DNA of 64,000 bases. Source: Rhodosorus marinus CCMP1338. Lineage: Eukaryota > Plantae > Rhodophyta. The notes under the pieces are model-generated. The model was not told the origin of the DNA. It searched no databases and saw only the letters and a list, made by a program, of their open reading frames with translations. The stretch covers positions 496,001-560,000 of the forward strand of contig JAMWBK010000004.1 in the NCBI GenBank assembly GCA_029953675.1, in the 5' to 3' direction. This document shows positions 1,615-50,181 of this stretch, one piece after another (position 1 is the stretch's first letter; the number at the start of each line of letters is the position of its first letter). The position numbers and the translations under genes were made by a program.

Positions 1615-3207
1615 ATGGGGACGGTACTGATCTTGATAGCCGTACTGGCATTGTATGTGAATCGCTGCCATGGGAGTGCGGGCGTACGAGATCGTGATTT
1701 GCTGTGGCCTGAGCAAGTGTTCTTTGAGTTCGACGAGACCATTGACTTCGTCGTTGGGGTCGTGGTGCACAAGGCGATACGGAAGTTTGAGTCGGCGACT
1801 TGCAGGGAGTTCATCTACGACACGGAAAAACTGAATCGCATAAAATTTGTTCTGGACAAGGACAGGTGCTTCCAGACCAAGGTTGGTTACCGTAGTAGGG
1901 TTCACAAAGTCTATATTCATCCAGAGTGCACCGAAGAAGAAGACAGAATCGGAACCTTCACCCACCAAGTCATTCACGAGCTTGGACATGCTCTTGGACT
2001 CTACGATGAGACAAGTAGACCCGATCGAGGAGGGCACGTAAGGGTTAGGAGGTACTATGTTCGGAACCGGGCCCTCGACAGTGCGTACTTTAAGAAGCTC
2101 TCTTGGGATGAGGTCGACAACCAGGGCGTTAACTTCGATTTCAAATCCGCCATGCACTATGGAGGTAGATTTTTATCCAAGAGCAGTTCAAAGAATACTA
2201 CAGAGCCTAAACGAGCGACAGACGAGTTCCTCCTGAGCGACGAGCTTAGCAACGGCGACGTCAATACATTGCAGAGGATGTATCGGTGCAAAATGGCAAA
2301 CGAAGCAAACAATTCAATCATGCTCATTAAACTCAAGCAAGGTCACAACTTCCCCCTGATGGATAGCAGACTTAAAGGGCAACCTAAGGAGGTTAGGAAC
2401 CCCGACTCCGTTGTCGTATTAGTGGCGTTTACATGGGAGGGCGCCCCAGCCCTTCGGGAAAGTTTTGTCATCACTGACGTGAGGGATCCGGACTGGCACT
2501 CCCACAGTATCAACTTCGGAGAAGGTCGATGGGCTTACTTTACTATGGAGGTTTTAGATCAGGATCCAGGAGGTGAAAGAGAGACAATCATCTATAGACA
2601 GACCTTCGTTCCTAGCGTCCGGTCAGCTGGGCCGATGATTCTCTGCAAGACTCCGGATTCCTGCGATCAGAGCCTCGAATTTGAGCTATTTTATAAGCTG
2701 CAGACGGACTATTGTCGTACTCATACCTGTGAGCACGATGGCGTCTGTCAGAACTTCTTGAGTGGGCCTCTATGTTGGTGCGAGCGAGGGTACAGAGGGG
2801 ATCGCTGCGAGCAGAACTGGGGAAGACTGGTCGTCGAAGTTTTAGAGGCAGACAACCTCCCTGATAAAGACCCATGGCGCAACATGTCGGACCCTTACGT
2901 CGTAGTGGTGGCAGTAGATCACTTTGGAGTGCCGAAAGCAGACAAAACGAGTGTAAAGGGGGGAACTGGCCATCCTATCTGGCAGGACGAAGAGATGGAC
3001 TTTTGGTACGGCAGCTGGAAATCGATGAAGCTGACGGTGAAGGACTCGGATGGCGGCTCAGGCGATGAAACTCTCCTCGGAACGTTTGAACGCCGACTAC
3101 CAGATGCGTGGAGCACTGCGTCCGGTATGCAGGAGCTGGTTCTTGATGACTGCGCGAACGGCAACTGTGATCGGTATCTGAAGATCAAGTATGGATTTTA
3201 CTATTGA
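1615..3207 (+). CDS. Secreted astacin-like (M12A) metalloprotease with C2-like, EGF and C2 domains (530 aa)
   Basis: The in-frame ATG at 1615 gives a signal peptide (MGTVLILIAVLALYVNRCHG). Zn motif HELGHALGLYDETSRPDR, Met-turn SAMHY, EGF CRTHTCEHDGVCQNFLSGPLCWCERGYRGDRC, and C2 with NLPDKD...SDPYV...KDSD. No introns. Confidence 0.88.
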   Translation: MGTVLILIAVLALYVNRCHGSAGVRDRDLLWPEQVFFEFDETIDFVVGVVVHKAIRKFESATCREFIYDTEKLNRIKFVLDKDRCFQTKVGYRSRVHKVYIHPECTEEEDRIGTFTHQVIHELGHALGLYDETSRPDRGGHVRVRRYYVRNRALDSAYFKKLSWDEVDNQGVNFDFKSAMHYGGRFLSKSSSKNTTEPKRATDEFLLSDELSNGDVNTLQRMYRCKMANEANNSIMLIKLKQGHNFPLMDSRLKGQPKEVRNPDSVVVLVAFTWEGAPALRESFVITDVRDPDWHSHSINFGEGRWAYFTMEVLDQDPGGERETIIYRQTFVPSVRSAGPMILCKTPDSCDQSLEFELFYKLQTDYCRTHTCEHDGVCQNFLSGPLCWCERGYRGDRCEQNWGRLVVEVLEADNLPDKDPWRNMSDPYVVVVAVDHFGVPKADKTSVKGGTGHPIWQDEEMDFWYGSWKSMKLTVKDSDGGSGDETLLGTFERRLPDAWSTASGMQELVLDDCANGNCDRYLKIKYGFYY

Positions 3208-3484
3208 GAAACCCAGAGGAGCAGCCCGTTCACCCTCTCGAACCGGCCCGCAAGGGGAACCTAGTCTTTCTTATCCTCAAATTAACTCTCAAATGCAAGC
3301 GACGAGGGTTACTGAGAAATCGTGGAATCTCAAGACACTGGGGATTATTTCTCAGAAGCGTAAGCTTTCTTCTTTCTGGCTTTCTACATAAACCAAACGA
3401 TAGTTGAAGCCTAGACCGATCATCTCGAGTGCCCCTGTCGATCTCGGAGATCACTCCCACCGCATTTACGTTGGGACATCTTGT

Positions 3485-4071
3485 TCACTTGGCCGGGCAA
3501 GTGAGTCCCACTATGCACTTTGCGACGCCTGAGGTGCTATTTACTTTGCACCTGTCCGGTTGGTTTCCTTGTGGAGTGACGAGGATGTATTCCCCCTTCA
3601 CCTTCACCTGAGTCCTGGAGACAAGGCACATGTCCTTTCCACAGCAACTCTTCGGTGATTCGATTTCATCCGCGCAGATCACGTACTTCCTCTCTGCCAG
3701 CTTCTCCGTGCTCTTGATGGTGTACTTGGCGTTCCCTCGAGGAACTTTACTGCACTTCCTGAAGACGCCAAGCCTCACCTTGGACTTGATATCACCAGGG
3801 AGTTCCACCTTCACTCGAAGACAAAACCTTCCCCTTCCAGTCCTCGTCGTAGTCGTACACAGGGATCCATAACTGTTCCCCTTGGAGTCTCTCAGCTTCT
3901 GACAGAAGTGCTCAAACTCCGCCCGACTGCCCTCATCGATCCCATCTCCACAACTATGAATCTCCCCTTCATGCCTTACTGACAAATACACCCCGCTACT
4001 GAGCAACCCCTTAGCACCAAAACACTCGATCCCAAAATACAAAAAAGTATAAAATAAATCAAAGACTTCAT
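3485..4071 (-). pseudogene. Secreted Cys-rich domain protein with a 1-nt frameshift near the 5' end (pseudogene or homopolymer error)
   Basis: ATG at 4071 encodes a signal peptide MKSLIYFILFCILGSSVLVLRGCSVAG in a different frame from ORF 3485..4042. One extra base, e.g. in the G4 run near 3990, would join them. The Cys pattern matches 37452..38003 and the N-terminal domain of 53362..55077. Confidence 0.65.
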
Positions 4072-4761: not shown

Positions 4762-6282
4762 TTAGGCGGCGACGTACACGGGAGCAGCCGTTGGCGCATA
4801 TGTAGGGGCCACTGTTTCGTACGCCGTCTCGTGCTCAGTAGGGTACTCGGTGGCGTCCTCAGTTGGGTACTCGGTAGGGTACTCGGTGGCGTCCTCAGTT
4901 GGGTACTCGGTGGCGTCCTCAGTTGGGTACTCGGTGGCGTCCTCAGTTGGGTACTCGGTGGAGTCCTCAGTTGGGTACTCGGTAGGGTACTCGGTGGGGT
5001 ACTCGGTGGGGTACTCGGTGGGGTACGCGGTGGGGTACGCGGTGGGGTACGCGGTGGGGTACGCGGTGGGGTACTCGGTGGGGTACGCGGTGGGGTACGC
5101 GGTGGGGTACGCGGTGGGGTACTCGGTGGGGTACTCGGTGGGGTACTCGGTGGGCTCCTGAGACGGGTACGGTGTCTCCTTGTGGTCGCACGGCTTCTCC
5201 GAGACAGTCTCATAAGGGGTAGCGGTCTCATAGGCAGTCTCGTACGGGGTCGGAGCCTCAGTCCCATACGGAGTCTCAAAGGGGGTCTCGTATGGAGTCG
5301 CTGTGTGGCTGCAAGGGGTCTCATAAGCGGTCTCGTACGGGGTGGCAGTCTCAGTCTCGTACGGAGTCTCATAGGGGGTCTCGTATGGAGTCGCTGTGTG
5401 GCTGCAAGGGGTCTCATAAGCGGTCTCGTACGGGGTGGCAGTCTCAGTCTCGTACGGAGTCTCATAGGGGGTCTCGTATGGAGTCGCTGTGTGGCTGCAA
5501 GGGGTCTCATAAGCGGTCTCGTACGGGGTGGCAGTCTCAGTCTCGTACGGAGTCTCATAGGGGGTCTCGTATGGAGTCGCTGTGTGGCTGCAAGGGGTCT
5601 CATAAGCGGTCTCGTATGGGGTCGGAGCCTCAGTCTCGTACGGGGTTCCAGTCTCATAAGCGGTCTCGTATGGGGTCGGAGCCTCAGTTTCGTACGGGGT
5701 TCCAGTTTCATAAGCGGTCTCATACGGGGTCGGAGCCTCAGTTTCGTACGGGGTTCCAGTCGCATATTCAGTCTCAGACGGTGTCGGAGCCTCAGTCTCG
5801 TACGGAGTTCCAGTCTCATAGGCCGTCTCGTAAGGTGTCGGAGCATCAGTCTCGTACGGAGTTCCAGTCTCATAGGCCGTCTCATACGGGGTCGGAGCCT
5901 CTGTATAATACGGAGTTTCAGTTTCGTACGGGGTCCAGGTCTCGTAATCGGTCTCATACGGCGTTTCCGTGGGGATTTCTGTGTGATTGCAGGGAGGCGT
6001 CAACGTTGGGTAAGCTGTAGGCGTCGGCTCCTTGTCACACGGAGTGGGAGCGACCGAGTGGCATGGACCATCGGACTTGCACGGACTATCTCCCTCAACT
6101 TCGAGGTTATTGATGATCAAGTTGTCAACGTTCTTGATGACCAGGCTGTCAACGTGAACGTTCTCAATATGCACATCCCGCTCACCATCGATCTCGACCG
6201 GTCCAGTGTATTCCGCCGGCACAGACAGGGCCGCGCCAACGAGCGCGAACAGAACCAAAACTCCAGCAGTAACCTTCATCAT
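4762..6282 (-). CDS. Secreted Pro/Thr/Tyr/Glu-rich repeat (mucin/extensin-like) protein
   Basis: Signal peptide MMKVTAGVLVLFALVGAALS, followed by tandem PYET, PTEY/PTAY and PTEDATEY repeats. This is the only frame with a signal peptide and non-repetitive ends. Confidence 0.82.
   Translation of the reverse strand: MMKVTAGVLVLFALVGAALSVPAEYTGPVEIDGERDVHIENVHVDSLVIKNVDNLIINNLEVEGDSPCKSDGPCHSVAPTPCDKEPTPTAYPTLTPPCNHTEIPTETPYETDYETWTPYETETPYYTEAPTPYETAYETGTPYETDAPTPYETAYETGTPYETEAPTPSETEYATGTPYETEAPTPYETAYETGTPYETEAPTPYETAYETGTPYETEAPTPYETAYETPCSHTATPYETPYETPYETETATPYETAYETPCSHTATPYETPYETPYETETATPYETAYETPCSHTATPYETPYETPYETETATPYETAYETPCSHTATPYETPFETPYGTEAPTPYETAYETATPYETVSEKPCDHKETPYPSQEPTEYPTEYPTEYPTAYPTAYPTAYPTEYPTAYPTAYPTAYPTAYPTEYPTEYPTEYPTEYPTEDSTEYPTEDATEYPTEDATEYPTEDATEYPTEYPTEDATEYPTEHETAYETVAPTYAPTAAPVYVAA
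4835..5960. repeat. Coding minisatellites: 12-bp, 24-bp, 54-bp and 93-bp units
   Basis: gctgcaagggg recurs at 5308, 5401, 5494 and 5587 (93-bp period). ggtggggtactc/ggtggggtacgc 12-mers run from about 4975 to 5150. Confidence 0.95.
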
Positions 6283-16091: not shown

Positions 16092-16709
16092 ATGAAGACG
16101 GTGAAGCTGATTACGCTGCTTGTCGCCGTCATAACGATGACCGCGTACGTGGAGGCGGAGAACTACCAGCCGGCCTCCTATTGGATGACCGGCTTCACCG
16201 TTGTTTCTTGGCGTATGTACTTATTTGATGAGCCCGTACCCAACAACTGCATGCCACTCATAGGGAAGGCGAACGCGTGGGGTGCTGAAAATCCATGGGT
16301 CAAAGTCGCCGACGTGTGCATATCTATCGTGACATACCAAGGCGAACTCTCGACTCTTTTCCATTACACGGCTCGGCCAGGATACACAATCGCAGCGGCT
16401 TACTCGGGCGTACATAGAAACTGCTTACAGAAGAAAAAATTCCCCTACCAAACGGTAGCAAAGTTTGGAGAGCTTGGGGAACAGGTTGTGACCCAGATTG
16501 TTCCCTTCAGCGAATATGATTGCCCGGCGGAATATGAAGAGGGTTGCTGCAACAGGAGGAACTGTCTCAGCCCCAAGGTCCGAGCCCACAAGGTTCTCGC
16601 TCCGGAATATACTTTTACTGGGTTCCCGCCAAACGGAAAGTATGGATGCCGAACCGTACGTGGCCTCAGGCGCTGCCTTGCAGACCTACAATGCTTTAAT
16701 CCAGAATAA
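16092..16709 (+). CDS. Secreted Cys-rich domain protein (205 aa)
   Basis: Signal peptide MKTVKLITLLVAVITMTAYVEA. Clear paralog of 26653..27264 (HRNC, FPY, EYDCPAEY..GCCNRRNC, GCRT.RGLRRCLA). Confidence 0.85.
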   Translation: MKTVKLITLLVAVITMTAYVEAENYQPASYWMTGFTVVSWRMYLFDEPVPNNCMPLIGKANAWGAENPWVKVADVCISIVTYQGELSTLFHYTARPGYTIAAAYSGVHRNCLQKKKFPYQTVAKFGELGEQVVTQIVPFSEYDCPAEYEEGCCNRRNCLSPKVRAHKVLAPEYTFTGFPPNGKYGCRTVRGLRRCLADLQCFNPE

Positions 16710-20132: not shown

Positions 20133-20479
20133 CGGAAAGTCTCCTGACTGCGCCACTTGGGTGTACACTCCACCGTAATCCTTCTGACTATACCTACGCG
20201 GAATGCCTGTCCGAACGCTGCGCCCAGCGATTCGGTCTCCTTAGGCACCGTAATTTACATCTTCGCGGCTGCCGCGGTCGTCATGAGGTTCACCTGCGCT
20301 CCGCAGTCCACGATCGCATTGAACTTGACGCCGCCTACTTCTGCCGCGAAGATGCAAATTACGGTGCCTAAGGAGACCGAATCGCTGGGTGCAGCGTTCT
20401 GACAGGCATTCCGCGTAGGTATAGTCATAAGGATTACGGTGGAGTGTACACCCAAGTGGCGCAGTCCGGAGACGTTCCG
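20133..20479. repeat. 139-bp inverted repeat with a 69-bp spacer inside the gypsy element
   Basis: 20133..20271 is the reverse complement of 20341..20479, with 7 mismatches counted by eye. Confidence 0.92.
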
Positions 20480-20914
20480 GCGGGGGGGATGTTGGCGTAT
20501 CCTTGTCAGTTTCACCGCCAGTTCTACATGCTGGTTGTGGCTCGCGAATCGCGTTCGCAGGGCAACTTGCAACGCTGCCCACGTTACCCGTTGTGTCACG
20601 GGAAGGGTGCGGTACCATTCGGTAACGGTTTTTGCAAGCCCTCGAACCGCGATGAAAAAAAAAAGCAAGTCACTGTCCTCCTCGAGGATATAAACGGCCT
20701 TCAGGTGCTCGAGCTCGCTTATGAATGTCTCGACGTCTGAAGTACCGTCGAAAGTCGGGGACTCAGATTTCTTTGGTAGTCGTCCCGATCGAGCTCCTTG
20801 CTGTTGTTGTAGCTGTTGCTGTTCCTGCACAAGCTGCTCCGTCATCCGCTGTTGTTGCTCTAGTAGTTGAGTAACCGCGGGCATCCACGCACCTGGAGGA
20901 GGATCGGGTTCCAT
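20480..20914 (-). pseudogene. Retrotransposon gag, truncated
   Basis: PTFDGTSDVETFISELE...AKTVTEWY...VTWAALQVALRTRF, typical of the retrotransposon gag domain. It is interrupted by the inverted duplication. Confidence 0.8.
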
Positions 20915-33840: not shown

Positions 33841-36800
33841 GTATGGCTTTACTGGACTTTACTGGACTTTACTAGCATAGCCTGAAGCGCTACGCAAGGC
33901 GTGAAGATGAACTAATAACTAGGGAGGGAAGTATGCAACCCCAGGCGCCGATGGCGCGCCTCGGAAAGCATGTGGCTGGAATATCGCCAAAGGGAGACAC
34001 TTAAACGCCTCAAGAGCGCCAAATATTCAGTAGGATGCTCAGCAAAACATTTCCGCAACCACACTAAACCCGACTTATCCACGTGACCAAAGCTTTCCAC
34101 AATGAATGGCTGGAACCGGTGAGAGCGACCCTCAGCGCAAGGCAGACTGGCCATGCTCTCAGCATACCGTCGTTCCTTAACTCTTCGAAGGGCTGAAGCC
34201 GCGGCCCCCCGGCGGCGGGCGGCTGCGGTGAGGTGGGCGCTAGCCACGGAGCAGGTAATCGCAAGGTCCACATATGTTGAGCGTCTGGCAGCAGCGTCGG
34301 AGACGAGGAGATCGGCTATACAACGGGGCGGTGCAGAGTCCGAGATTGATCTGGGCAGTTCCGACTCAACCTCAACCGTATGCCCTATCCGAGTCAAAAA
34401 TTCGCTGAGGATGTACTTGAGGCGAGTGTGACGCCTCGTACGGAGACCTCTCAACAGTCCGCAGGAACCCAGGAAGTGGTAGCCACAAGCGTCAATCCGA
34501 CTCTCACATCCCTGACAGAAAGACGGCCGATTAGAGTGCCACGGAGCCTGTGGCAAACCGAGATATATCCGTGCGGCAGAACGGAACTGGAAAGCATCGA
34601 GCCGATGACTCAATGACGACGGTAGAGTGGTTAACCACAAGTGCGAGAGACGGCCTCCCATGCCGAGGAGACGAGCGGCAGTGGTAGGCGGCGTGAGAGG
34701 AGAATTGAGCATGACTGTGTGAGCGGCACTGTGTTGGCCCCAGGTGAGGCTATGTTGAATCACATCAGTGCGGGAGCTCCACAATCGGCTCAAACCCGGG
34801 TAGTCTGCAACAGGTGACCCGGGGCTAGCCTCTCCGTCATCCGCAAGAACTCGGTCGAGGGGACAATCCTCAATCGCTTCAGCTCGTCCCCATAACAGCT
34901 CCTTCCAGGAACGAAAGCGGGACCGATTTGCGTCCGGCACGGCGTTGCACCTCCTGAACGCGTGTTGTTGAAGACCATCATAAATTGTCAAAAGCGGGGG
35001 CGGCAGGGTCACTGGATCCTCGTTGGTCAAAGCTCGAACCAAGAGGCAGGCACTTCGCATCTGGAAGGTCACCAACGTTCGCAGCGCGGTAGCCCAGGAG
35101 GCAACCGCCGCTGGCGAGCATATCAGCCCACGGTCTGCGACGCCGAATCCCCCGAATCGCAACGGTAGAGCGATCTGTTCACGAATCAAGTCCCTATCGG
35201 GAGCAGCTTTAAGATCGAGGGGCTCATCCAAGAGCGTTCCCCAGTGTTGCAGGGTCATCTCGTCGGTTTTAGCCGCGATCCACGAGCCCCAAGCTGGAGG
35301 CAGGCTGCGCAACCAGTAGTTGAGTCTGGGACCGGCACAAAAGCGGGAAAGCAAGCAGGCCGATTGCAGCATGCTGTCGGGTAGGTGCTCAATGGCGTCG
35401 GTGAGTTGCTTGTGCCGTGCCAAAACTCGCTCGCAGGATGCTTGGACAAAGTTGTCAGTCCCCAATCCGACGCCGTGGTGTTCGAACCCTTCACGTTCGC
35501 TGATTAGTCGCAGAGTGGGAGGCAGAGAGGCCAGCGACACGTCCCTCGGGGGGAGAAAGCGACATTTTTCTGTTTCCGAAGTCAAACCGACGCGACGTGC
35601 AATCGCTTCGATCTCGGTCAGCCCCCTAGCCAGGGTGTCAGGGGTGCCCAGCAATGTTACGTCATCGTGGTACGCGCAGATTCGAAGATCCGAGACCTCA
35701 GTCGAGAGACGTAAAAGTACGAGCTGTAGGGCACAGGCATGAAGAAGAGGTCCGCAAGGGTCGCCTTGTTGGACGCCAGTATGTGCTTGAAAAACAGTGC
35801 CCTCCGTTGTCAAGTAGGGGAGGCTCTCCCCTCCGTAAATACCCGATAGAAACGGCCACGCCTCCGGAAACACCCGTCGGAGCACCTCTAGCGCATGTGT
35901 CCGCGACACGCTGTTGAATGCGTTCCGGAAATCAACCACCAAGACTCCCCACTCCGGCCTACTGGCCCGTTCTAGCTCGATCCCATGGGTGATCAGTTCG
36001 CAACCCCCAAAAAATCCCACCCCTACTTGCAAGGGCGGCATAAAAGCTGTGACTCGCTGGCGAAGGCGCTGGCATAGCCACCTCCCGGCTAACTTCCGTA
36101 GGCTCTCCACCATCCCGATCAGCCGGAGACGCGAGTGGGCCGGCTGGTGGTCAGGTTTCGTGAGCAAGCAAAGCTGTGCCTGCCGGAGATGTTCCCATGG
36201 CGCAGACGCACCCGATACGCCCTGGAACAACTTGTAAAGGATCCTCAGAAGCGCGCTCTGGCCAGGCTGGCTCAGGGCCTGCAATAGCTCTGTTCTTAGT
36301 CCGGAGGGTCCGGGACAGCGTCCCCGACGCGAGGTACGAAGCAAATCCTCCAGGTCAGACTCACTGAGCGTCAGATCGATGCGAAACCTGGCCAACTCCG
36401 GACGGTCCAAGAATACCTCGAATTCAGGGGACAAGTCCACGTCGGACTCAGGGAACAAAGACGACACCGTCTGGGCGAGACTATCATCGTAGGGGAGGAC
36501 AGGCGCCTGGCCCTCCAAAACCCGCGCCGCTCGACTTAAATCGCCCACTGCTACCAATTTCTGTACTCGAGCCGGCACGGGCGACACTGTGCCATGCCGA
36601 GTCCGACGGGCGGATGGTGCTGGCGATGCCAAATAGCTGCGCTGTAGTACTTCGAAGTCTCCCTTCAAGAACAGGGCCAGTCGGTCTCGTACTCGCCATC
36701 TGCGCTCCGATGTGTGAATGGGGGCCAGAATCAGGCGCGGCATGACCCCCAGAAAAACCCAAATGACTGTGTCCCGAATGTTACGAGCCCGAATGTTACG

Positions 36801-37085
36801 AGCCAGGCTCGTGAAGATGAAATCGAGAATGGTTCCAGCTACTAGAAGGTCTCGACAAGGGAGGACGACTGGGGGAATGCCTCCACGGAGGGGAAGCGAG
36901 CCTCCTTCCAAAGAAATCCACCGCCGGAGCCAACTCCGAAAACGCGTACGCCAAATGCCCCAGTCTCCGCCCTCCTTCAGGACATAAGACTGTAGATCCA
37001 TAGGCTGCGACCTCGCAGCCGTGCCTGGAGCGCTAATCGTGCTTCTCCCCCTTAGACCCGGGGGAGTCGGTCCTCGCTCTCTTAC
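33841..37085 (-). mobile_element. Full-length single-ORF CRE-like non-LTR retrotransposon (family A, A1)
   Basis: Intact 1029-aa ORF, a short structured leader, and a 3' tail with 10-bp repeats (ctttactgga x2.7 on the plus strand). The 5' boundary is approximate. Confidence 0.9.
33912..37001 (-). CDS. RT, CCHC and restriction-like endonuclease protein (1029 aa, intact)
   Basis: CPGPSGLR, DFRNAFN, GVQQGDPCGP and YHDD; CQGC...H...C and RRH; IADLLV...YVDLAIT...KERRY. Confidence 0.93.
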   Translation of the reverse strand: MDLQSYVLKEGGDWGIWRTRFRSWLRRWISLEGGSLPLRGGIPPVVLPCRDLLVAGTILDFIFTSLARNIRARNIRDTVIWVFLGVMPRLILAPIHTSERRWRVRDRLALFLKGDFEVLQRSYLASPAPSARRTRHGTVSPVPARVQKLVAVGDLSRAARVLEGQAPVLPYDDSLAQTVSSLFPESDVDLSPEFEVFLDRPELARFRIDLTLSESDLEDLLRTSRRGRCPGPSGLRTELLQALSQPGQSALLRILYKLFQGVSGASAPWEHLRQAQLCLLTKPDHQPAHSRLRLIGMVESLRKLAGRWLCQRLRQRVTAFMPPLQVGVGFFGGCELITHGIELERASRPEWGVLVVDFRNAFNSVSRTHALEVLRRVFPEAWPFLSGIYGGESLPYLTTEGTVFQAHTGVQQGDPCGPLLHACALQLVLLRLSTEVSDLRICAYHDDVTLLGTPDTLARGLTEIEAIARRVGLTSETEKCRFLPPRDVSLASLPPTLRLISEREGFEHHGVGLGTDNFVQASCERVLARHKQLTDAIEHLPDSMLQSACLLSRFCAGPRLNYWLRSLPPAWGSWIAAKTDEMTLQHWGTLLDEPLDLKAAPDRDLIREQIALPLRFGGFGVADRGLICSPAAVASWATALRTLVTFQMRSACLLVRALTNEDPVTLPPPLLTIYDGLQQHAFRRCNAVPDANRSRFRSWKELLWGRAEAIEDCPLDRVLADDGEASPGSPVADYPGLSRLWSSRTDVIQHSLTWGQHSAAHTVMLNSPLTPPTTAARLLGMGGRLSHLWLTTLPSSLSHRLDAFQFRSAARIYLGLPQAPWHSNRPSFCQGCESRIDACGYHFLGSCGLLRGLRTRRHTRLKYILSEFLTRIGHTVEVESELPRSISDSAPPRCIADLLVSDAAARRSTYVDLAITCSVASAHLTAAARRRGAAASALRRVKERRYAESMASLPCAEGRSHRFQPFIVESFGHVDKSGLVWLRKCFAEHPTEYLALLRRLSVSLWRYSSHMLSEARHRRLGLHTSLPSY

Positions 37086-37451: not shown

Positions 37452-38003
37452 CTAGTTATCGGTCGAACATGTTAGCTTTGTGGAGCATCCTACTGCATTG
37501 TCGGTTATCAAGGCACACCTATCAGCTTCGGGTTTCAGGGTAGCACGGAAGTTTCCCCAACCCACGTGAATCTCAGCGGCCACGCATACGGTTGAGTCGC
37601 ACGAAAACGAGTCTGCATTCGAGATTTCTTCGAAGCAGAAGTCAACGGTCTTGGTGCTTATGGGGTGTTTAGCCACCCGTCTGAACTGGAACGCTTTATT
37701 GGAACTTCCAGTATGTCTTCTGCAGTCTTCCTTAACCCCCAACCGAAGCTTGCGGATACCTCCGTAGGTACTATGGACCTTGACACGGAGGCAATGCTTT
37801 CCGTTCACCATCACCGATTTCGTGCACATGTTGCCCATCCTCTCCCTGAAATAGTCCACAAGCGTCACACAATACCCGTCTACATGTACATACGGTCTAG
37901 TCTCATCGCTTTTACTATTCCGAATTGCTGCCTTGGTTGGAAGTCCAGCAACCAATCCCAGACCAACCGCGAAAACACAAATGGCTAGGAAACCGAACTT
38001 CAT
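37452..38003 (-). CDS. Secreted Cys-rich domain protein (183 aa)
   Basis: Signal peptide MKFGFLAICVFAVGLGLVAG. The Cys pattern C..G.MC..CLRV..GV..DC..C.EEI..C...C..C..C..C is shared with the genes at 3.5 kb and 55 kb. Confidence 0.83.
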   Translation of the reverse strand: MKFGFLAICVFAVGLGLVAGLPTKAAIRNSKSDETRPYVHVDGYCVTLVDYFRERMGNMCTKSVMVNGKHCLRVKVHSTYGGIRKLRLGVKEDCRRHTGSSNKAFQFRRVAKHPISTKTVDFCFEEISNADSFSCDSTVCVAAEIHVGWGNFRATLKPEADRCALITDNAVGCSTKLTCSTDN

Positions 38004-40782: not shown

Positions 40783-40785
<3 letters not shown>

Positions 40786-42015: not shown

Positions 42016-42026
42016 GGGTATATAAA
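42016..42026 (+). promoter_or_regulatory. Candidate TATA box GGGTATATAAA
   Basis: 134 bp upstream of the ATG at 42150. Confidence 0.5.
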
Positions 42027-42149
42027 CCCTCCGGTGGTAGTCTAGACTTGACTTGTGAAGGCGTAAGGAGCAGGGACGTCGCGAGAAAAAAGCGTTGAAG
42101 ATCAGTTTGTAAGGGAAAAGGGTGTGTTCCAACCCTATTGAAAGAAACC

Positions 42150-42710
42150 ATGAAGCTTCTCGTTGTAGCTGCTTACCTGGTTGCACTGGGCGCGATGCGC
42201 ACGTCCAGTGTGAATGTTTCTGTTGAGTCTGCGTATGATCCAGGTGCTCTGTCGGAGTCAAAAGTGTTTGAAGCGTACAATATGCCCTATGATGTAGAGC
42301 AAAAGCCATCGCAAATCGAAGAATATGACGACGATGACGAGGAAAGGCCACGGGACCCGTTGGTACCTGAAGAAACTTTTGATGATGGACTGAGCGGCGG
42401 GGAAATAGCTGGTATTTTCATAGGCGTCATCGGAGGTGTAGCATTGATTGCCGTGGGCTCTTGGTTCTTGTTCGTGCGGAGGAAGAAGAAGAGGAGGAGG
42501 AGGACGAGGAAGACCAACGCCGATGGCGTGTCCGAGTCCGGGTCTGAGTATGAATATCCCTCGGATAGCGAAGATGCTGAGGACCCGTTGGAAAGGGCGA
42601 TGGCTCAAGATGAGAAAGCTGATTTCTCCACTTTCGATGAGCCAGAGAATCTAGTGAAGTGTGGCCTGCCGTGTGTCAGACCACAAGAGGTAGCTGAAGA
42701 TGAGATCTGA
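42150..42710 (+). CDS. Type I single-pass membrane protein with acidic ectodomain and tail (186 aa)
   Basis: Signal peptide MKLLVVAAYLVALGA, TM segment GLSGGEIAGIFIGVIGGVALIAVGSWFLFV, stop-transfer RRKKKRRRR and an acidic tail. Confidence 0.8.
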   Translation: MKLLVVAAYLVALGAMRTSSVNVSVESAYDPGALSESKVFEAYNMPYDVEQKPSQIEEYDDDDEERPRDPLVPEETFDDGLSGGEIAGIFIGVIGGVALIAVGSWFLFVRRKKKRRRRTRKTNADGVSESGSEYEYPSDSEDAEDPLERAMAQDEKADFSTFDEPENLVKCGLPCVRPQEVAEDEI

Positions 42711-44271: not shown

Positions 44272-46293
44272 ATGATGAAGGTGATTTTGTTGTACCCTTT
44301 GGTGTGTTTGGTTGTGCTGAGGATCTGTAGTGCTGCTGGTGTGAGGGGGTCACACAAAAAGTGGGATGCAGACAAACCGATTCGATACAGTTTTGACAAG
44401 GACGTGATTCCGTCGGCGAAGGATAGTATTGTTGCCGCGTTGGAGCGGTTCGAGAGAGATACTTGCCTGGAGTTTAAGGAGGGCAAGTCGAGCGGGAACC
44501 ACATCTTTTTCACGTCGAAGAAATCTGAATGCTACTCCGCGAGGGTTGGATTCCGAGGTGGACGGCACATTGTTTCCGTCCACCCATACTGTTACGGAGG
44601 GTATCCCCTTCTGTCACAGGCGCTATATCAACTTGGCAAGGTACTTGGTATGGTCGAGACGCACAGCCGGCCCGACAGGGACGATCATATTAGCGTGAAC
44701 AAATCCAACGTCCTCGTGAGGTTTCGCTCACTGTTCTCCAAGGTGCGGTGGTCGGACTATGCGGATGAGGGTGTAGGCTTTGACCGCAACTCAATCATGA
44801 TCTTCGAACAGCGCTTTCTCTCCAGAAACGGTAAGAAGACCTTCGCGATGAAAAACAGCGCTGTCTCACGTCCAGCCGCCAGCAAATGGCTCAGCAAATC
44901 CGATGTCAAGCTTCTCAACCGAATGTACGATTGCCCAGCAAAGGCAGAGAAGGGCAGGTTCATCTTCCGCTTGAAGCGAGCCAGGAACTGGCCCGCCAGG
45001 GCTCGGGTGAAGGTGACGGCGGTTGACTCCAAGGGCAAGAGGCACGTCAAGCAGATGACCGTAAAGAGGGATCCCAACACGCCTCGCTTCTTCGGCTACA
45101 AATTTGACTTTGGGAAAGGGAGATTTCAGTATTTCCGAGTCGCCGTTCTCAACAACGACATTGCCAACCCGCAGCAGATCTTCCTGGAGCAGCTCTATAC
45201 TATCTCAGAGGGTGATACGTACTTCCTCCTGTGTCAAGCTCCTGGAAGCTGCAACACGAACCTCAGGTTCAAGACGGAATTCAAGCCGCTGCCCGGCGGC
45301 GGTAGCCGTTGTGATCCCAATCCGTGCAAAAACGGTGGCGAGTGTAAAGTAGCAGGTGGCTCATCATACACCTGCAAGTGTCTCGCAGGTTTCTACCGGC
45401 AAAACTGTGAGCTGATGTGGGGGGAGCTCATTGTCACTGCAGTTCGCGGTCAGAACCTAGACCATGACGATTCGGATGATGTACTTGACCGACGGGTGAA
45501 CATACCGGATCCCTACGTGCAGGTCACCGCAACAAACTTCAACAACACCGAAGTCGTTCGGAAGAGCCGAGTTGAGAGGAACAACGCCAATCCGGACTGG
45601 AAGGGCGAGAGACTCTACCTCGGTATGAGCTCCTGGCAAGAGATAGAGGTGAAGGTGCTTGACTTTGAATCAGACCCAGGCAACGTCCATGAGCACCTCG
45701 TGCCAAGAAGAAGGTTTCATCGTACTCCCAGCTACGGCGAGTCCACGATCCTCCTGTGCGGTTCTAACCCGGGCTGCACGCGATTCGTAGAGATCAAACT
45801 CTCTTTCAAGCCAGTTGCACCTCCGCCTATCTGCCCAGTTGGTTTCACCGGCTTCAACTGCGACATACCGTTCGGAGTCCTGGACGTGAAAATCTTCAAA
45901 GGCGTCGGTCTACCTAATGATAGTGGGAACCCCCTTAATCCCTTCGTTGTGATCACCGCGAAGAACGAGCGGTGCCTTCAGTTCTCAAAGGAAACGTCGA
46001 CAAAGTTCGGAACCACAAATCCCGTCTGGGATGAATCGTTCCAGTTCGGGAAGGAAACATGGACAAGTGTCGCGATCAATGTCATGGCTGAGGATGTGCT
46101 TGGAGACGGTGACATACAAGTCCTTCCCACCCAGGAGTTCTTCATCAAACCCGTTCCCGAATTCAAAATCGTCTTCAGGAGGAGGGTCTGCATATCACCT
46201 CGGAACTGTACACAGTATGTGGAGATTGAGATATCCTACAAAGAGAGACTTCAGCCCGACGTAGTCTCCGACCAGCTATATGCTTGTGCTTGA
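44272..46293 (+). CDS. Secreted astacin-like pseudo-protease with C2-EGF-C2-(short Cys link)-C2 (673 aa)
   Basis: Signal peptide and astacin fold with the zinc motif replaced by YQLGKVLGMVE while RPDRD is kept. EGF CDPNPCKNGGEC...CLAGFYRQNC. Three C2-like domains. Confidence 0.88.
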   Translation: MMKVILLYPLVCLVVLRICSAAGVRGSHKKWDADKPIRYSFDKDVIPSAKDSIVAALERFERDTCLEFKEGKSSGNHIFFTSKKSECYSARVGFRGGRHIVSVHPYCYGGYPLLSQALYQLGKVLGMVETHSRPDRDDHISVNKSNVLVRFRSLFSKVRWSDYADEGVGFDRNSIMIFEQRFLSRNGKKTFAMKNSAVSRPAASKWLSKSDVKLLNRMYDCPAKAEKGRFIFRLKRARNWPARARVKVTAVDSKGKRHVKQMTVKRDPNTPRFFGYKFDFGKGRFQYFRVAVLNNDIANPQQIFLEQLYTISEGDTYFLLCQAPGSCNTNLRFKTEFKPLPGGGSRCDPNPCKNGGECKVAGGSSYTCKCLAGFYRQNCELMWGELIVTAVRGQNLDHDDSDDVLDRRVNIPDPYVQVTATNFNNTEVVRKSRVERNNANPDWKGERLYLGMSSWQEIEVKVLDFESDPGNVHEHLVPRRRFHRTPSYGESTILLCGSNPGCTRFVEIKLSFKPVAPPPICPVGFTGFNCDIPFGVLDVKIFKGVGLPNDSGNPLNPFVVITAKNERCLQFSKETSTKFGTTNPVWDESFQFGKETWTSVAINVMAEDVLGDGDIQVLPTQEFFIKPVPEFKIVFRRRVCISPRNCTQYVEIEISYKERLQPDVVSDQLYACA

Positions 46294-46349
46294 TAGGGCT
46301 AGCTGCTTTCCCATTCTACTAAGATTGATTTATTATTGGCAAGACTAAA

Positions 46350-48123: not shown

Positions 48124-50181
48124 ATGAAGTCAAGAAGCTCTTTGGTGATAATTGCCTCCGTCGCGGTTGTTTTTTGCGCTGGTGTGTGCTCAGGAGCAGT
48201 GGTACGAAGCGAATCGAAGAAATGGGACGTGTCCAAACCAATTCCATACCGGTTTTCGAACTCTGTGGACGCCGTGACCAAGTTCTATGTAAGGGAAATA
48301 TTGACGCAGTTCAACTACACCTGTCTAAAGTTTGAAGAGGACCATGAGGGAGTCAAGAAGGACCATGTGTACTTTATCCAGGATAGAAAGCAGTGTTTCC
48401 AAGCGAAAGTGGGTTTCCGCGGGGGTCGTCACATCGTTTCAGCGAGCGCGGTATGTCCGGGTGGGTACTCAACTACCACTCACGCGCTTCATGAGCTGGG
48501 ACACGTTCTGGGAATGTACAACTCAGTCAATCGTCCTGATCGGGACGACTTTGTTGATGTGAAGAGCAAGAACGTCATCAAGGCGTTTCGTAGCCATTTT
48601 TACAAAGAGTCGTGGGAAGACGTCGCAAACGAAGGCCTCAACTTCCCCTTCCGTTCCATCATGACGATGGATGAATACTGGCTCTCAAAAAATGGTAAGA
48701 CAACGGTGTTTCCTAAGAAATCTGAGGACACGCTCGAGTCGAGGTCGAACTTAAGCGCGTCCGATGCGCGTCTGCTGAACCTTGCATACAACTGTCCGAG
48801 TCCAGCTGCTTCTGGAAAGTTCATCTTGAAGCTTAAGCGAGGTAGAGGCCTCCCGAAGAAGGCCTATGTCGTAGTAACGGTTTATCAACAGGACGGAGTG
48901 ATCCGCAGCAAGGTCTTGAAAGTGAAGTCGTCAGAGCCCTCACAGAGGTACTTTGGCTACAAGCTGAGCTTTGGAGTTCAGACGTTCAAGTACTGCCGGG
49001 TGAAGGTCGTGAAAGGGACTGGTCGCAACGCCAAGGCTATCTTTCACGAGCAAGTGTTCCATTTTCCGCAAAATGCAGACAGTTACCACAAACTATGTGA
49101 GGCTCCGGGCGACTGCGACAAGCACCTTCGATTCAAGATCGAGTTCCACGAAGAGGACGATGGCCTCCCTCCCGGCGATCAAGATGGCAGATGTGCTAGG
49201 AGCCCGTGTCAGAACGGCGGCGTATGCGAGAACACACCCCTTGGCGTTCATTCTTACCACTGCCATTGCCCACCGGGATTCTTCCGGGACGTCTGTGAGC
49301 TTCCTTTTGGCGAGCTGCTGGTGGAGGTAGTCAAGGGCCACAACCTCCCCAATCTGGATGAGTCGCAGCCTGGTGAGGGACCGGCGTCGGATCCGTTCGT
49401 GTCCGTCTTCGCCCAGAACGTGAACGGAACTGTCGTCAAGAGAGTCAGCAAAATTGTGAGAGATAGCAACAACCCGAACTGGGGCCGTCAGCTACTAAAG
49501 TTTGACTACAGCTCCTGGCTTGCCTTTACGCTCGATGTCTATGACTATGATGAGGAGGGCCCGCCCAGACTCCTCCTTCCGAGACGCTCGTTCGAGATCA
49601 CTCCGACGGCGAGGAACGGAGGGAAGAAAATCTACAAGGCCTGTGGAAAGGATCCAGAGTGCTCGAGTTACGTTGAATTCAGAGTCTCCTACGAGGAGAT
49701 TCCGTTCGAACCCCCTCTCTGTCCTGTCGGGTACATGGGTTACAACTGCACCGTGCCCTATGGACAGCTTGATATCAGAGTAAAGGGGGGACGTAACCTC
49801 ACCAACCTGGATGCTTCGAATGATGCACTATCAGACCCCTTTGTGCAGATCACCGCCGACGGTTCCTGTTTGACTGCGTCTGTAAAAGAGAAGACTACGC
49901 ACAAACCCGACACAGCGAATCCAGTATGGGACGAGACGCTCAGATTCGGAACCGACAATTTCGATAAGATCAAGGTGAAGGTTTTGGATGCCAACAAGGG
50001 GGGTAAGACTGATGTAATCATACCGAAAAAGACGTTCAAAATCTTTCCTCAATCTCCAGACGCACGGACGAGGCTCCTCAGAGTGTGCAAATATGACAAC
50101 TGTGCTGAGTATGTAGACCTCGAGGTCACGTACATGGGGCTCCAACAGCCCGATATCTTCCCTTTACGGGCATGCCAGTAG
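48124..50181 (+). CDS. Secreted astacin-like protein with C2-EGF-C2-(short Cys link)-C2 (685 aa)
   Basis: The in-frame ATG at 48124 gives a signal peptide (MKSRSSLVIIASVAVVFCAGVCSG). Motif HELGHVLGMYNSVNRPDRD, EGF CARSPCQNGGVC...CPPGFFRDVC, and C2 domains with SDPFV. Confidence 0.88.
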   Translation: MKSRSSLVIIASVAVVFCAGVCSGAVVRSESKKWDVSKPIPYRFSNSVDAVTKFYVREILTQFNYTCLKFEEDHEGVKKDHVYFIQDRKQCFQAKVGFRGGRHIVSASAVCPGGYSTTTHALHELGHVLGMYNSVNRPDRDDFVDVKSKNVIKAFRSHFYKESWEDVANEGLNFPFRSIMTMDEYWLSKNGKTTVFPKKSEDTLESRSNLSASDARLLNLAYNCPSPAASGKFILKLKRGRGLPKKAYVVVTVYQQDGVIRSKVLKVKSSEPSQRYFGYKLSFGVQTFKYCRVKVVKGTGRNAKAIFHEQVFHFPQNADSYHKLCEAPGDCDKHLRFKIEFHEEDDGLPPGDQDGRCARSPCQNGGVCENTPLGVHSYHCHCPPGFFRDVCELPFGELLVEVVKGHNLPNLDESQPGEGPASDPFVSVFAQNVNGTVVKRVSKIVRDSNNPNWGRQLLKFDYSSWLAFTLDVYDYDEEGPPRLLLPRRSFEITPTARNGGKKIYKACGKDPECSSYVEFRVSYEEIPFEPPLCPVGYMGYNCTVPYGQLDIRVKGGRNLTNLDASNDALSDPFVQITADGSCLTASVKEKTTHKPDTANPVWDETLRFGTDNFDKIKVKVLDANKGGKTDVIIPKKTFKIFPQSPDARTRLLRVCKYDNCAEYVDLEVTYMGLQQPDIFPLRACQ

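What the first reader, a model, noticed from the sequence alone, without database searches (positions are those of the whole stretch)
1615..50181. Secreted astacin-C2-EGF-C2 family: a protease fold joined to a perforin-like EGF-C2 membrane-binding module
Seen: three intronless paralogs (1615..3207, 44272..46293, 48124..50181) share signal peptide, astacin, C2-like, EGF and C2 domains. The two longer ones add a short CPxGxxGxNC link and a third C2. The second C2 of paralog 1 keeps a full-looking set of Ca2+ aspartates (LPD.D, SDPY, DSD, GD). Known: C2 domains are mostly cytosolic, and perforin-1 (MACPF-EGF-C2) is the classic extracellular case. Astacins occur in animals and bacteria but not in land plants or fungi. 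Inferred: a Ca2+-dependent, membrane-docking secreted protease family, possibly for defence or against epiphytes and possibly horizontally acquired if the host is an alga.
Basis: partly seen in the sequence, partly recalled or inferred. Interest (0 to 1): 0.82.

Follow-up and report, generated by a model that had tools for sequence, protein, structure and literature searches.

The report
Secreted astacin–C2–EGF family in red alga
Three genes in this stretch of the red alga Rhodosorus marinus encode secreted proteins that join an animal-type astacin protease fold to calcium/lipid-binding C2 domains and EGF modules. Two of the three have lost the catalytic zinc site, none has the usual inhibitory propeptide, and the same uncharacterised architecture also occurs in a sponge.

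Summary
Three single-exon ORFs (1615-3207, 44272-46293, 48124-50181, + strand) encode signal peptide–astacin–C2–EGF–C2, and two of them add a half-EGF link and a third C2. The window is nuclear DNA of the red alga Rhodosorus marinus CCMP1338.

- **Zinc site:** it is non-canonical in all three copies. par1 has the third His replaced by Asp. par3 has His replaced by Asn and has lost the Met-turn Tyr. par2 has lost every ligand and the catalytic Glu.
- **Propeptide:** there is none. The signal peptide abuts the mature astacin N-terminus.
- **Distribution:** the architecture is not unique. R. marinus has at least 8 paralogs, Purpureofilum (same red-algal class) has one, and a larger clade with canonical sites and FEGD propeptides includes a Halichondria sponge protein.

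No prokaryotic, viral or sampled metagenomic astacin locus carried C2 or EGF. The C2 domains are generic synaptotagmin/ferlin-type, not specifically perforin-like. The terminal C2s keep their Ca2+ ligands, while the first C2 of par2 and par3 is degenerate.

Best reading: a red-algal expansion of a secreted, Ca2+/membrane-docking astacin family that is drifting into pseudoproteases. Acquisition from animals is plausible but unresolved. This is a new variant of a known kind and is uncharacterised.

The parts
1615..3207 (+). par1: 530-aa secreted astacin-C2-EGF-C2 protein (gene model identical to the public R. marinus protein P0005)
   Evidence: ORF; Pfam Astacin E = 5e-32, C2 E = 2e-11, EGF; identical protein on the 3.19 Mb contig
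1615..1680 (+). par1 signal peptide (aa 1-22, ...NRCHG/SAGVRD). The astacin domain follows directly, with no propeptide.
   Evidence: Hydrophobicity maximum 3.26; astacin HMM begins at aa 23; no FxGD motif
1681..2295 (+). par1 astacin catalytic domain. The zinc motif HELGHALGLYDETSRPDRG (nt 1975-2031) has Asp in place of the third His. The Met-turn SAMHY (nt 2146-2160) is intact. Four conserved Cys align with the two astacin disulfide positions.
2299..2700 (+). par1 first C2 (C2a). Acidic ligands are retained (FPLMD...NPDS; LDQDPGGERE), and a CxxxxxC loop precedes the last strand.
   Evidence: Ligand table; beta-sandwich at pLDDT about 60-67; tandem-C2 Foldseek hits
2701..2814 (+). par1 EGF domain (six Cys)
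   Evidence: Pfam EGF, 17.6 bits, below the 21.5-bit cut-off; six Cys aligned with EGFs of the paralogs
2815..3204 (+). par1 second C2 (C2b). All five canonical acidic Ca2+ ligands are present (LPDKDPW..SDPYV nt 2857-2901; KDSDGGSGDE nt 3040-3069), with Trp at the loop-1 tip.
   Evidence: Pfam C2; alignment to Syt1 loop 1; ligand table; pLDDT 80-90
44272..46293 (+). par2: 673-aa secreted pseudo-astacin-C2-EGF-C2-halfEGF-C2
   Evidence: ORF; Pfam; domain map
44338..44940 (+). par2 astacin-fold domain, catalytically dead. The motif reads YQLGKVLGMVETHSRPDRD (nt 44626-44682): all three His and the catalytic Glu are lost. The Met-turn reads SIMIF (Tyr lost).
   Evidence: It is still 43% identical to the par3 domain.
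44941..45288 (+). par2 degenerate first C2 (loop 1 deleted, Asp ligands lost)
   Evidence: No Pfam hit; hhalign 99.1% to C2; ligand table
45289..45414 (+). par2 EGF domain
   Evidence: Pfam EGF E = 7e-7
45415..45813 (+). par2 second C2 (ligands partly kept: D, D, D, E)
45814..45867 (+). par2 half-EGF link (ICPVGFTGFNC, nt 45829-45861)
   Evidence: Aligns to the C5-C6 part of an EGF; relatives have a full EGF at this position
45868..46245 (+). par2 third C2 (ligands largely degenerate)
   Evidence: Pfam C2, second stretch
48124..50181 (+). par3: 685-aa secreted pseudo-astacin-C2-EGF-C2-halfEGF-C2 (the ORF listing ORF starts at a TTG at 47926; the ATG at 48124 matches the public gene model)
48199..48801 (+). 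par3 astacin-fold domain. The motif reads HELGHVLGMYNSVNRPDRD (nt 48490-48546): the third His is Asn and the family Glu is Ser. The Met-turn reads SIMTM (Tyr lost). Probably inactive.
48802..49152 (+). par3 degenerate first C2 (loop 1 deleted, no acidic ligands)
   Evidence: beta-sandwich at pLDDT 60-80
49153..49302 (+). par3 EGF domain
   Evidence: Pfam EGF E = 4e-6
49303..49698 (+). par3 second C2 (LPNLD..SDPFV; YDYDEEG: four canonical Asp plus Glu)
49699..49755 (+). par3 half-EGF link (LCPVGYMGYNC, nt 49717-49749)
49756..50139 (+). par3 third C2 (D, D, D, N, D at the ligand positions)
   Evidence: pLDDT about 80-88; multi-C2 ferlin hits over about 520 columns

Best explanation
The three genes belong to a lineage-specific expansion of a secreted multidomain family in stylonematophycean red algae, with at least 8 paralogs in Rhodosorus marinus. 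The family layout is signal peptide, astacin (M12A) fold, then (C2-EGF)n-C2.

Proposed mechanism:
1. Signal-peptide cleavage directly creates the mature astacin N-terminus, so there is no propeptide latency step.
2. Outside the cell, in seawater with about 10 mM Ca2+, the canonical C-terminal C2 domain(s) load Ca2+ and dock the protein onto anionic lipid surfaces. These could be the alga's own plasma membrane or foreign cells and vesicles. The EGF modules act as rigid spacers.
3. The founding type (P0002, canonical HExxHxxGxxHE + SIMHY) is a true membrane-docked endopeptidase.
4. The six genome-encoded copies descend from an ancestor that had already lost the third zinc His. par1 (His to Asp, Tyr kept) may retain weak or altered activity. 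par2 and par3 are pseudoproteases that keep the fold as a binding module.

Shown: the domain content, the motif states, the absence of a propeptide, the distribution, and the clade structure.
Inferred: secretion, Ca2+/lipid docking, activity or inactivity, and the biological role (surface or extracellular-matrix processing, or interaction with other organisms).
For: - Source organism: R. marinus CCMP1338, GCA_029953675.1 (PMC10250338).
- Domains.
- Signal peptides, and no TM segment.
- No propeptide: P0002 residue 19 aligns to residues 2-3 of mature BMP-1 and astacin. 0 of 10 red-algal members have the FxGD motif, against 25 of 29 non-red-algal members with an N-terminal extension.
- Zinc-motif states.
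- The six copies lacking the third His form a clade with 99% bootstrap support.
- The dead astacin domain is still 43% identical between par2 and par3, at least as conserved as their C2s. ORFs of 1.6-2.1 kb remain intact at 27-39% identity.
- Ca2+ ligands are conserved in the terminal C2s, with an aromatic residue at the loop-1 tip in par1 and many relatives.
- The C2 fold is confirmed.
- Other paralogs and relatives: KAJ8904749, KAJ8903135, KAJ8905601, KAJ8903131, A0A7S3A5U5, and a Purpureofilum sequence from EukProt.
- GC3 is the same as in neighbouring genes, so contamination is unlikely.
Against: - No experimental or expression data exist for the window copies. Only P0002 and the Purpureofilum sequence are transcript-derived.
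- Signal peptides were judged by hydrophobicity only.
- The AlphaFold models of the astacin domain are unreliable (pLDDT below 50, MSA of 4), so the geometry of the altered zinc site is unknown.
- C2 domains can bind proteins or carbohydrates instead of lipids. par2 and par3 C2 loops are polar and partly degenerate.
- The Asp-for-His substitution could either preserve or abolish activity.
- P0002 was not found as a gene model in this genome's protein set, so it may come from a divergent strain.
Confidence: 0.6

Rival explanations
1. All three are active, Ca2+-dependent, membrane-docking secreted proteases that use a perforin-like EGF-C2 targeting module for defence or against epiphytes.
For: - Astacin Pfam E of about 1e-31 for each copy.
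- par1 keeps HExxH, the Met-turn Tyr and the RPDR motif.
- Perforin C2 (4y1t) is the best single-domain Foldseek hit for the par1 model (TMt 0.75, 23% identity).
- Ca2+ ligands are intact in par1 C2b.
Against: - par2 lacks all three His and the catalytic Glu. par3 lacks the third His, the family Glu and the Tyr.
- The C2 profile ranks synaptotagmins, ferlins, copine and PKC first, and perforin is not in the best 60.
- Perforin is absent from the par3 Foldseek top 50.
- There is no MACPF domain or any other pore-forming element.
Confidence: 0.12
2. The family works mainly as non-catalytic adhesion or matrix proteins. The astacin fold, the C2s and the EGFs all serve as Ca2+-dependent binding modules for the alga's own sulfated mucilage or cell-surface glycoproteins, not for lipid membranes. 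Even par1 is not an enzyme.
For: - The third zinc His is lost in all six genome copies.
- The first C2 is degenerate in par2 and par3.
- The window is a cluster of secreted, Cys-rich and repeat proteins, including an RTX Ca2+-binding-repeat protein and an acidic PT/EY-repeat protein.
- The extracellular C2s of Delta ligands work without Ca2+ (PMC5538765).
Against: - The terminal C2s keep the full acidic ligand set plus an aromatic loop tip, which is typical of lipid-inserting C2s.
- par1 keeps the catalytic Glu, two His, the Tyr and an Asp that could ligate zinc.
- P0002 and the Purpureofilum protein have canonical sites.
Confidence: 0.2
3. This is an artefact. The genes are animal (sponge) or bacterial contamination, or a mis-assembly, and not red-algal genes.
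For: - The nearest named non-algal relative is a sponge protein.
- One related cluster carries a 'Pseudomonadota MAG' label.
- Astacins are Holozoa-centred (PMC9848320).
Against: - The genes lie inside a 3.19 Mb long-read contig, among genes of the same GC3.
- Paralogs sit on three different large contigs.
- Independent transcriptome-derived homologs exist for R. marinus and Purpureofilum.
- They share only 25-30% identity with the sponge-type clade.
- None of the 80 prokaryotic astacin loci has C2 or EGF.
Confidence: 0.02

Closest known systems
Astacin family metallopeptidases (MEROPS M12A; astacin, BMP-1/tolloid, meprins, hatching enzymes)
   Same: - Pfam Astacin over the full 189-position model.
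- Best PDB sequence hits are tolloid-like 1 and BMP-1, E about 1e-24 for paralog P0002.
- RPDR(D) motif, Met-turn Met, four conserved Cys at the two astacin disulfide positions, and a mature N-terminus of the A-A/G-V-R type.
- Extracellular, with EGF as an accessory domain.
   Different: - No propeptide or aspartate switch.
- The third zinc His is replaced in every window copy, and par2 is fully dead.
- The accessory domains are C2, which is not in the accessory-domain list of the 2023 review (PMC9848320).
- The host is a red alga, a group the review does not name as an astacin carrier.
Uncharacterised astacin-C2-EGF-C2 proteins of the sponge type (e.g. Halichondria panicea XP_064387793 and many unnamed assembly-derived sequences)
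   Same: - Same domain order (AST-C2-EGF-C2, with variants carrying extra C2 or EGF).
- Same CxxxxC loop before the last C2 strand.
- Same AAVRD-type mature N-terminus.
   Different: - Canonical HEIGHAIGFWHEQSRPDR/SIMHY site.
- FEGD[IL] propeptide followed by a dibasic cleavage site.
- Only 25-30% identity to the window copies.
- A separate clade in the tree.
Perforin-1 (MACPF-EGF-C2)
   Same: - Secreted protein in which an EGF is followed by a Ca2+-binding C2 that docks onto target membranes only at extracellular Ca2+ levels.
- Perforin C2 is a good structural match to par1 C2b (TMt 0.75).
   Different: - No MACPF or pore-forming domain here.
- The C2 is not specifically related to perforin by sequence.
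- The effector domain here is an astacin fold.
Notch ligands Jagged/Delta (extracellular C2-DSL-EGFn)
   Same: - Extracellular C2 combined with EGF modules.
- Some members (Jagged) bind Ca2+ and lipid, while others (Delta) have lost the aspartates. This parallels the intact and degenerate C2s here (PMC5538765).
- The EGF of P0002 hits Notch and Delta EGFs.
   Different: - No DSL domain and no transmembrane segment.
- The C2 is C-terminal to an enzyme fold.
- No specific sequence relationship was shown.
Tandem-C2 membrane-trafficking proteins (synaptotagmins, E-Syts, ferlins, copines)
   Same: - Closest C2 relatives by profile (E = 7e-23 to synaptotagmin-7) and by Foldseek.
- Same five-Asp Ca2+ site and hydrophobic loop tips.
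   Different: - Those proteins are cytosolic, with no signal peptide, EGF or disulfides.
- The C2s here carry an extra Cys pair and sit in a secreted protein.

Membership tests
Astacin family (M12A) | Astacin catalytic-domain fold / Pfam PF01400 above the gathering score | tested here: met
   111.6, 108.7 and 111.4 bits against a 22.5-bit cut-off, covering model positions 2-189.
Astacin family (M12A) | Zinc motif HExxHxxGxxH followed by the family Glu (ExxRxDRD) | tested here: not met
   par1 has HELGHALGLYDE (third His is Asp). par3 has HELGHVLGMYNS. par2 has YQLGKVLGMVET. RPDR is kept in all three. Paralog P0002, outside the window, meets the feature.
Astacin family (M12A) | SxMHY Met-turn with the zinc-binding Tyr | tested here: inconclusive
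   par1 has SAMHY (met). par2 has SIMIF and par3 has SIMTM (Met kept, Tyr lost).
Astacin family (M12A) | Propeptide with a conserved Asp (FxGD) that confers latency | tested here: not met
   The astacin domain starts 1-3 residues after the predicted signal-peptide end. 0 of 10 red-algal members have the motif, against 25 of 29 other members.
Astacin family (M12A) | Two conserved disulfides (C42-C198 and C64-C84 in astacin numbering) | tested here: met
   Four Cys are invariant across the four paralogs (par1 C63, C85, C105, C225). Their assignment to the two astacin disulfide positions (as given in PMC9848320) is by position in the domain, not by a residue-level alignment to astacin. Disulfide formation itself was not tested.
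Astacin family (M12A) | Zinc-dependent endopeptidase activity | not testable with these tools
   Needs recombinant protein and peptide or protein substrates.
C2 domain (Ca2+/phospholipid-binding type) | C2 beta-sandwich / Pfam PF00168 | tested here: met
   - Pfam C2 for par1 C2b and for par2/par3 C2b and C2c.
- The middle domains reach it by hhalign at 99.1%.
- Foldseek hits C2 structures.
C2 domain (Ca2+/phospholipid-binding type) | Five acidic Ca2+ ligands in loops 1 and 3 | tested here: inconclusive
   - Met in par1 C2a and C2b.
- Essentially met in par3 C2b.
- Partly met in par3 C2c and par2 C2b.
- Not met in par2 C2a, par2 C2c and par3 C2a.
C2 domain (Ca2+/phospholipid-binding type) | Ca2+-dependent lipid binding | not testable with these tools
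   Needs a liposome co-sedimentation or flotation assay.
Perforin-like EGF-C2 module | C2 specifically related to perforin C2 (closer than to other C2 families) | tested here: not met
   Perforin is not in the best 60 of the profile search. It appears only at E = 5e-4, behind ferlins, for P0002 C2a. It is structurally marginal for par1 and absent from the par3 top 50.
Perforin-like EGF-C2 module | Association with a MACPF pore-forming domain | tested here: not met
   There is no MACPF hit in Pfam at E up to 1.
EGF-like domain | Six-Cys EGF pattern / Pfam PF00008 | tested here: met
   par2 scores 29.9 bits and par3 27.4 bits against a 21.5-bit cut-off. par1 scores 17.6 bits (below it) but has all six Cys aligned.

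The most novel reading that the evidence does not exclude
An entire animal-type extracellular gene (astacin-C2-EGF-C2) was transferred between an early animal lineage (sponge-like) and stylonematophycean red algae. In the alga it was rewired in two ways. First, the propeptide was deleted, so signal-peptide cleavage yields the mature N-terminus, and control of activity passed to Ca2+-dependent C2 docking. Second, the family then expanded into non-canonical forms (Asp-ligand) and dead pseudo-astacins that act as secreted Ca2+/membrane sensors or decoys. This would be the first propeptide-less astacin system and the first extracellular C2-targeted metalloprotease or pseudoprotease family in an alga.
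Probability: 0.25. Interest if true: 0.7.

Novelty: new variant of a known kind. Interest (0 to 1): 0.5.

Why it matters
- **Propeptide.** Astacins are described as always carrying a latency propeptide and as essentially holozoan (PMC9848320). Here a red-algal clade lacks the propeptide, has replaced the third zinc ligand, and carries an accessory domain (C2) that is not listed for the family.
- **Extracellular C2.** C2 domains are overwhelmingly cytosolic, and extracellular examples (perforin, Notch ligands) are few and biologically important. A whole family of secreted C2-bearing astacin folds, shared by a sponge and unicellular red algae, would give a new, tractable model for extracellular Ca2+-dependent membrane targeting. 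It is also a natural series running from active enzyme to pseudoenzyme.
- **Gene transfer.** It is a candidate case of animal-to-alga (or reverse) transfer of a multidomain gene.
- **Caveat.** The practical significance is modest until any function is shown.

Tried and rejected
1. Word-indexed homolog searches with single paralogs and with a 47-sequence alignment returned almost nothing beyond self and P0002. The exhaustive representative search was needed to find relatives.
2. Prokaryotic genome scans. The first found nothing. The second gave 80 astacin loci, none with C2 or EGF by my domain HMMs. A bacterial origin of the architecture is therefore unsupported, and the 'Pseudomonadota MAG' label on one cluster is probably mis-binned host DNA. 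That last point is an inference.
3. Viral contigs: no relatives, so there is no evidence for a giant-virus vector.
4. The JGI metagenome scan gave 80 astacin-only loci.
5. Full-length AlphaFold models were poor (pLDDT 54 and 57) because only four sequences were allowed in the MSA. The astacin part is unusable, and only the C2 domains were interpreted.
6. The NJ bootstrap tree of the catalytic domain does not resolve deep nodes, so the direction of any HGT cannot be called.
7. dN/dS between paralogs was not attempted. At 27-39% protein identity, synonymous sites are saturated.
8. Rfam and tRNA scans of the window were empty.
9. Literature searches for astacin with C2, red algae or sponges found no description of this architecture.
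10. Contig look-ups and MSAs using representative-search proteins were not attempted, because the tool descriptions restrict those inputs.

Full report
**Source and observation**

The window is positions 496001-560000 of contig JAMWBK010000004.1 (3.19 Mb) of assembly GCA_029953675.1. This is the long-read nuclear genome of the unicellular marine red alga Rhodosorus marinus CCMP1338, class Stylonematophyceae: 31 Mb, 8392 genes, 24,821 introns (PMC10250338).

They are identical to deposited gene models. tblastn finds no further copy or fragment in the window. par2 and par3 are 39% identical, and par1 is 27-28% identical to either. These are old paralogs, not recent tandem duplicates.

**Domains**

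- **Pfam calls.** Pfam gives Astacin at E of about 1e-31 for each protein, EGF, and C2 with one stretch in par1 and two each in par2 and par3.
- **The middle domain.** The domain between astacin and EGF is not recognised by Pfam in the window copies. It aligns to a genuine Pfam C2 in the paralog P0002. A profile of the degenerate copies matches the family's C2 profile at hhalign probability 99.1%, E = 6e-19, and the only large gap falls at Ca2+-binding loop 1.
- **Structure models.** They are confident for the C2 beta-sandwiches at about 80-90.
- **Fold search.** Foldseek returns tandem and multi-C2 proteins as top hits: E-Syt2, BON1/copine and ferlins, with about 520 aligned columns for par3, which spans all three C2s.
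- **The short link.** The 'CPxGxxGxNC' link is the C5-C6 half of an EGF. Relatives carry a full EGF at that position. The tail is therefore a (C2-EGF)n-C2 repeat.
- **Secretion signals.** Each protein has a strongly hydrophobic N-terminus followed by small residues (CHG/S, CSA/A, CSG/A) and no later TM segment. In par1 and par2 the count of mature Cys is even and partitions by domain. Each C2 carries a family-specific CxxxxC pair before its last strand. This fits an oxidising extracellular location, which is an inference.

The defining astacin motif is HExxHxxGxxH-E plus a SIMHY Met-turn (PMC9848320). The three copies read as follows.

| Copy | Zinc motif | Met-turn | State |
|---|---|---|---|
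| par1 | HELGHALGLYDE | SAMHY | third His replaced by Asp; otherwise intact |
| par3 | HELGHVLGMYNS | SIMTM | third His replaced by Asn; family Glu and Tyr lost |
| par2 | YQLGKVLGMVET | SIMIF | all ligands and the catalytic Glu lost |

So at most one of the three window genes can encode an enzyme, and that one would have a non-canonical metal site. From general knowledge, HExxHxxGxxD is used by snapalysin-type metzincins. I did not test this here.

P0002 residue 19 aligns to residues 2-3 of mature BMP-1 and astacin. In all ten red-algal members, the astacin HMM begins within a few residues of the end of the signal peptide.

By contrast, 25 of the 29 non-red-algal family members with at least 60 residues upstream carry the aspartate-switch motif FEGD[IL]. 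In these the motif is followed by a dibasic site and an AA[VI]RD mature N-terminus. The red-algal proteins start with the equivalent A[GA]VRD directly after the signal peptide.

The 2023 review states that astacins 'across all phyla' have a propeptide. These proteins are an exception.

**Distribution**

An exhaustive HMMER search of 1.84 billion representatives with a four-sequence profile returned 57 clusters that combine astacin with C2, with or without EGF.

Named members:
- Four further R. marinus proteins: KAJ8904749, KAJ8903135, KAJ8903131, and KAJ8905601, the last on the same contig as the window.
- The transcriptome-derived A0A7S3A5U5 (P0002).
- A Purpureofilum apyrenoidigerum sequence from EukProt (same red-algal class).
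- Halichondria panicea XP_064387793, from a sponge.

One cluster carries a 'Pseudomonadota MAG' label on a 2.4 kb contig. However, none of 80 prokaryotic astacin loci, no viral contig, and none of 80 sampled metagenome astacin loci has C2 or EGF next to the astacin domain.

The astacin review's list of accessory domains does not include C2, and it does not name Rhodophyta among the fewer than 400 non-holozoan astacins, which it attributes to HGT from holozoans. No paper in the held library describes the combination.

**Phylogeny**

In an NJ tree of the catalytic domain, the R. marinus copies group together. P0002 is the first branch, and the unnamed P0030 and the Purpureofilum P0120 sit beside them. 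The sponge-type C2-astacins form a separate large group, and the bacterial astacins lie elsewhere.

Bootstrap support:
- 99% for the six copies that lack the third His.
- 84% for par2 + par3.
- 56% for adding P0002.
- Deeper nodes are unresolved.

Loss of the canonical His therefore predates the expansion. All copies nevertheless retain long intact ORFs, and between par2 and par3 the dead astacin domain (43% identity) is at least as conserved as the C2 domains at 35-41%. This argues for retained, non-canonical function and against decay.

GC and GC3 match the neighbouring genes, so there is no compositional sign of a recent transfer. Contamination is excluded by the contig context, the multi-contig paralogy and the independent transcriptomes.

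**C2 details**

Alignment to synaptotagmin-1 places par1's LPDKD...SDPYV on the loop-1 ligands. The state of each C2, from the column-wise table, is below.

| C2 domain | Ca2+-ligand state |
|---|---|
| par1 C2a and C2b | all canonical acidic ligands present |
| par3 C2b | four Asp plus Glu |
| par3 C2c | D, D, D, N, D |
| par2 C2b | partial |
| par2 C2c | largely degenerate |
| par2 C2a, par3 C2a | loop 1 deleted, ligands lost |

par1 C2b and many relatives have Trp or Phe at the loop-1 tip, as in lipid-inserting C2s. That reading is an inference from general C2 knowledge.

The 'perforin-like' label does not hold as a relationship:
- The family's C2 profile hits synaptotagmin-7 (E = 7e-23), myoferlin, synaptotagmin-1 and -3, dysferlin, copine, Munc13, NEDD4 and PKC. 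Perforin is not among the best 60.
- Perforin C2 is only marginally the best single-domain structural match for par1 (TMt 0.75 against 0.70-0.74). It is absent from the par3 top 50.
- Perforin is not the only extracellular precedent. Notch ligands are C2-DSL-EGFn, with Jagged C2 binding Ca2+ and lipid and Delta C2 having lost its aspartates (PMC5538765). That mirrors the intact and degenerate C2s seen here.

**Mechanism proposed**

The steps below are inferred unless marked otherwise.

1. The proteins are secreted, and signal-peptidase cleavage creates the mature astacin N-terminus without a zymogen stage.
2. At seawater Ca2+ levels, the terminal C2 domain(s) dock the protein on anionic lipid surfaces, with the EGFs acting as spacers.
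3. The canonical member (P0002) would be a surface-docked endopeptidase. par1 may be a weak or altered enzyme. par2 and par3 would be pseudoproteases that use the fold as a binding module.

The biological role is unknown. Candidates are processing of the alga's own surface or mucilage, or interaction with bacteria, grazers or hosts.

The main rival is a purely adhesive or matrix role, in which the C2s bind polysaccharide or protein. It gains some support from the neighbourhood, which is a cluster of secreted, Cys-rich, repeat-containing and Ca2+-binding (RTX) proteins.

**Verdict**

This is a new variant of a known kind: the astacin family with C2 accessory domains, no propeptide, an altered or lost zinc site, and a red-algal host. 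It is present in databases only as 'hypothetical protein' or an automatic 'Metalloendopeptidase' name. It is shared with at least one sponge and is not described in any paper I could find. Interest is moderate (0.5). It is genuinely unusual for both the astacin and C2 fields, but it has no functional data, and HGT is unresolved.

Noticed in passing
window 53362-55077 (-): A 571-aa secreted protein with 13 RTX (HemolysinCabind) Ca2+-binding nonapeptide-repeat stretches (E = 1e-53), fused to an N-terminal Cys-rich domain. RTX repeats are typically bacterial, so finding them in a red-algal nuclear gene is unusual and may reflect another horizontal acquisition.
   Followed up: partly
window 3485-4042 (-), 37452-38003 (-), 54478-55077 (-): Three paralogous copies of a Cys-rich domain of about 180 aa with no Pfam match. 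It has conserved 'CLRVKV...RLGV..C' and 'CxxEI...CC...C' motifs and 9-10 invariant Cys. One copy forms the N-terminus of the RTX protein.
   Followed up: partly
window 16092-16709 (+) and 26653-27264 (+): Two 52%-identical paralogs of about 205 aa, with a signal peptide ('...YVEAENY'), 10 Cys and no Pfam match. This is another lineage-specific secreted family in the same region.
   Followed up: partly
window 4762-6282 (-): A 506-aa protein with a signal peptide and a long acidic tandem repeat rich in Glu, Thr, Pro and Tyr (ETPYETAYET..., PTEYPTAY...). It looks like a mucin- or extensin-type cell-surface or matrix protein. Overlapping ORFs on both strands are by-products of the repeat.
   Followed up: no
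window 28068-31208 (-), 33912-37001 (-), 31664-32848 (-), 20255-20914 (-): Two reverse-transcriptase ORFs of about 1030-1046 aa, only 28% identical to each other, lie in a GC-rich block (about 55-58% GC at 28-37 kb). There is an upstream 394-aa ORF with no Pfam match, and a separate gag/aspartic-protease fragment. This is a nest of retroelements between par1 and par2.
   Followed up: partly
window 60703-61551 (-): A secreted alpha-type carbonic anhydrase is split into at least two exons. 61195-61551 holds the signal peptide and Pfam positions 2-57, and 60703-61128 holds positions 96-253. About 40 profile positions are missing between them, so there may be a small extra exon. Unlike this gene, the astacin-C2 genes are single-exon.
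   Followed up: partly
window 42150-42710 (+) and 59598-60251 (+): A small type-I membrane protein (signal peptide, acidic ectodomain, one TM, KKKRRRR stop-transfer, acidic tail) with no Pfam match, and a glutathione S-transferase.
   Followed up: no
representative-search proteins P0035, P0115, P0118, P0135, P0140, P0043, P0053, P0060 (not in the window): Outside the red algae, a subset of C2/EGF-astacins has independently replaced the catalytic Glu (HTxxH, HIxxH, HLxxH or HMxxH). Most of these (6 of 8) also lose the Met-turn Tyr (SIMHL or SIMHQ). Five of them (P0035, P0115, P0118, P0135, P0140) group together in the NJ tree, and four of those have only a short pro-segment without FEGD. Pseudoprotease evolution therefore seems to recur in this architecture.
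   Followed up: partly
P0030 (Logan assembly, 533 aa; not in the window): The nearest unnamed relative of the red-algal clade has HDLGH, with the catalytic Glu replaced by Asp. It has no propeptide and a degenerate first C2. Its organism could not be identified.
   Followed up: no
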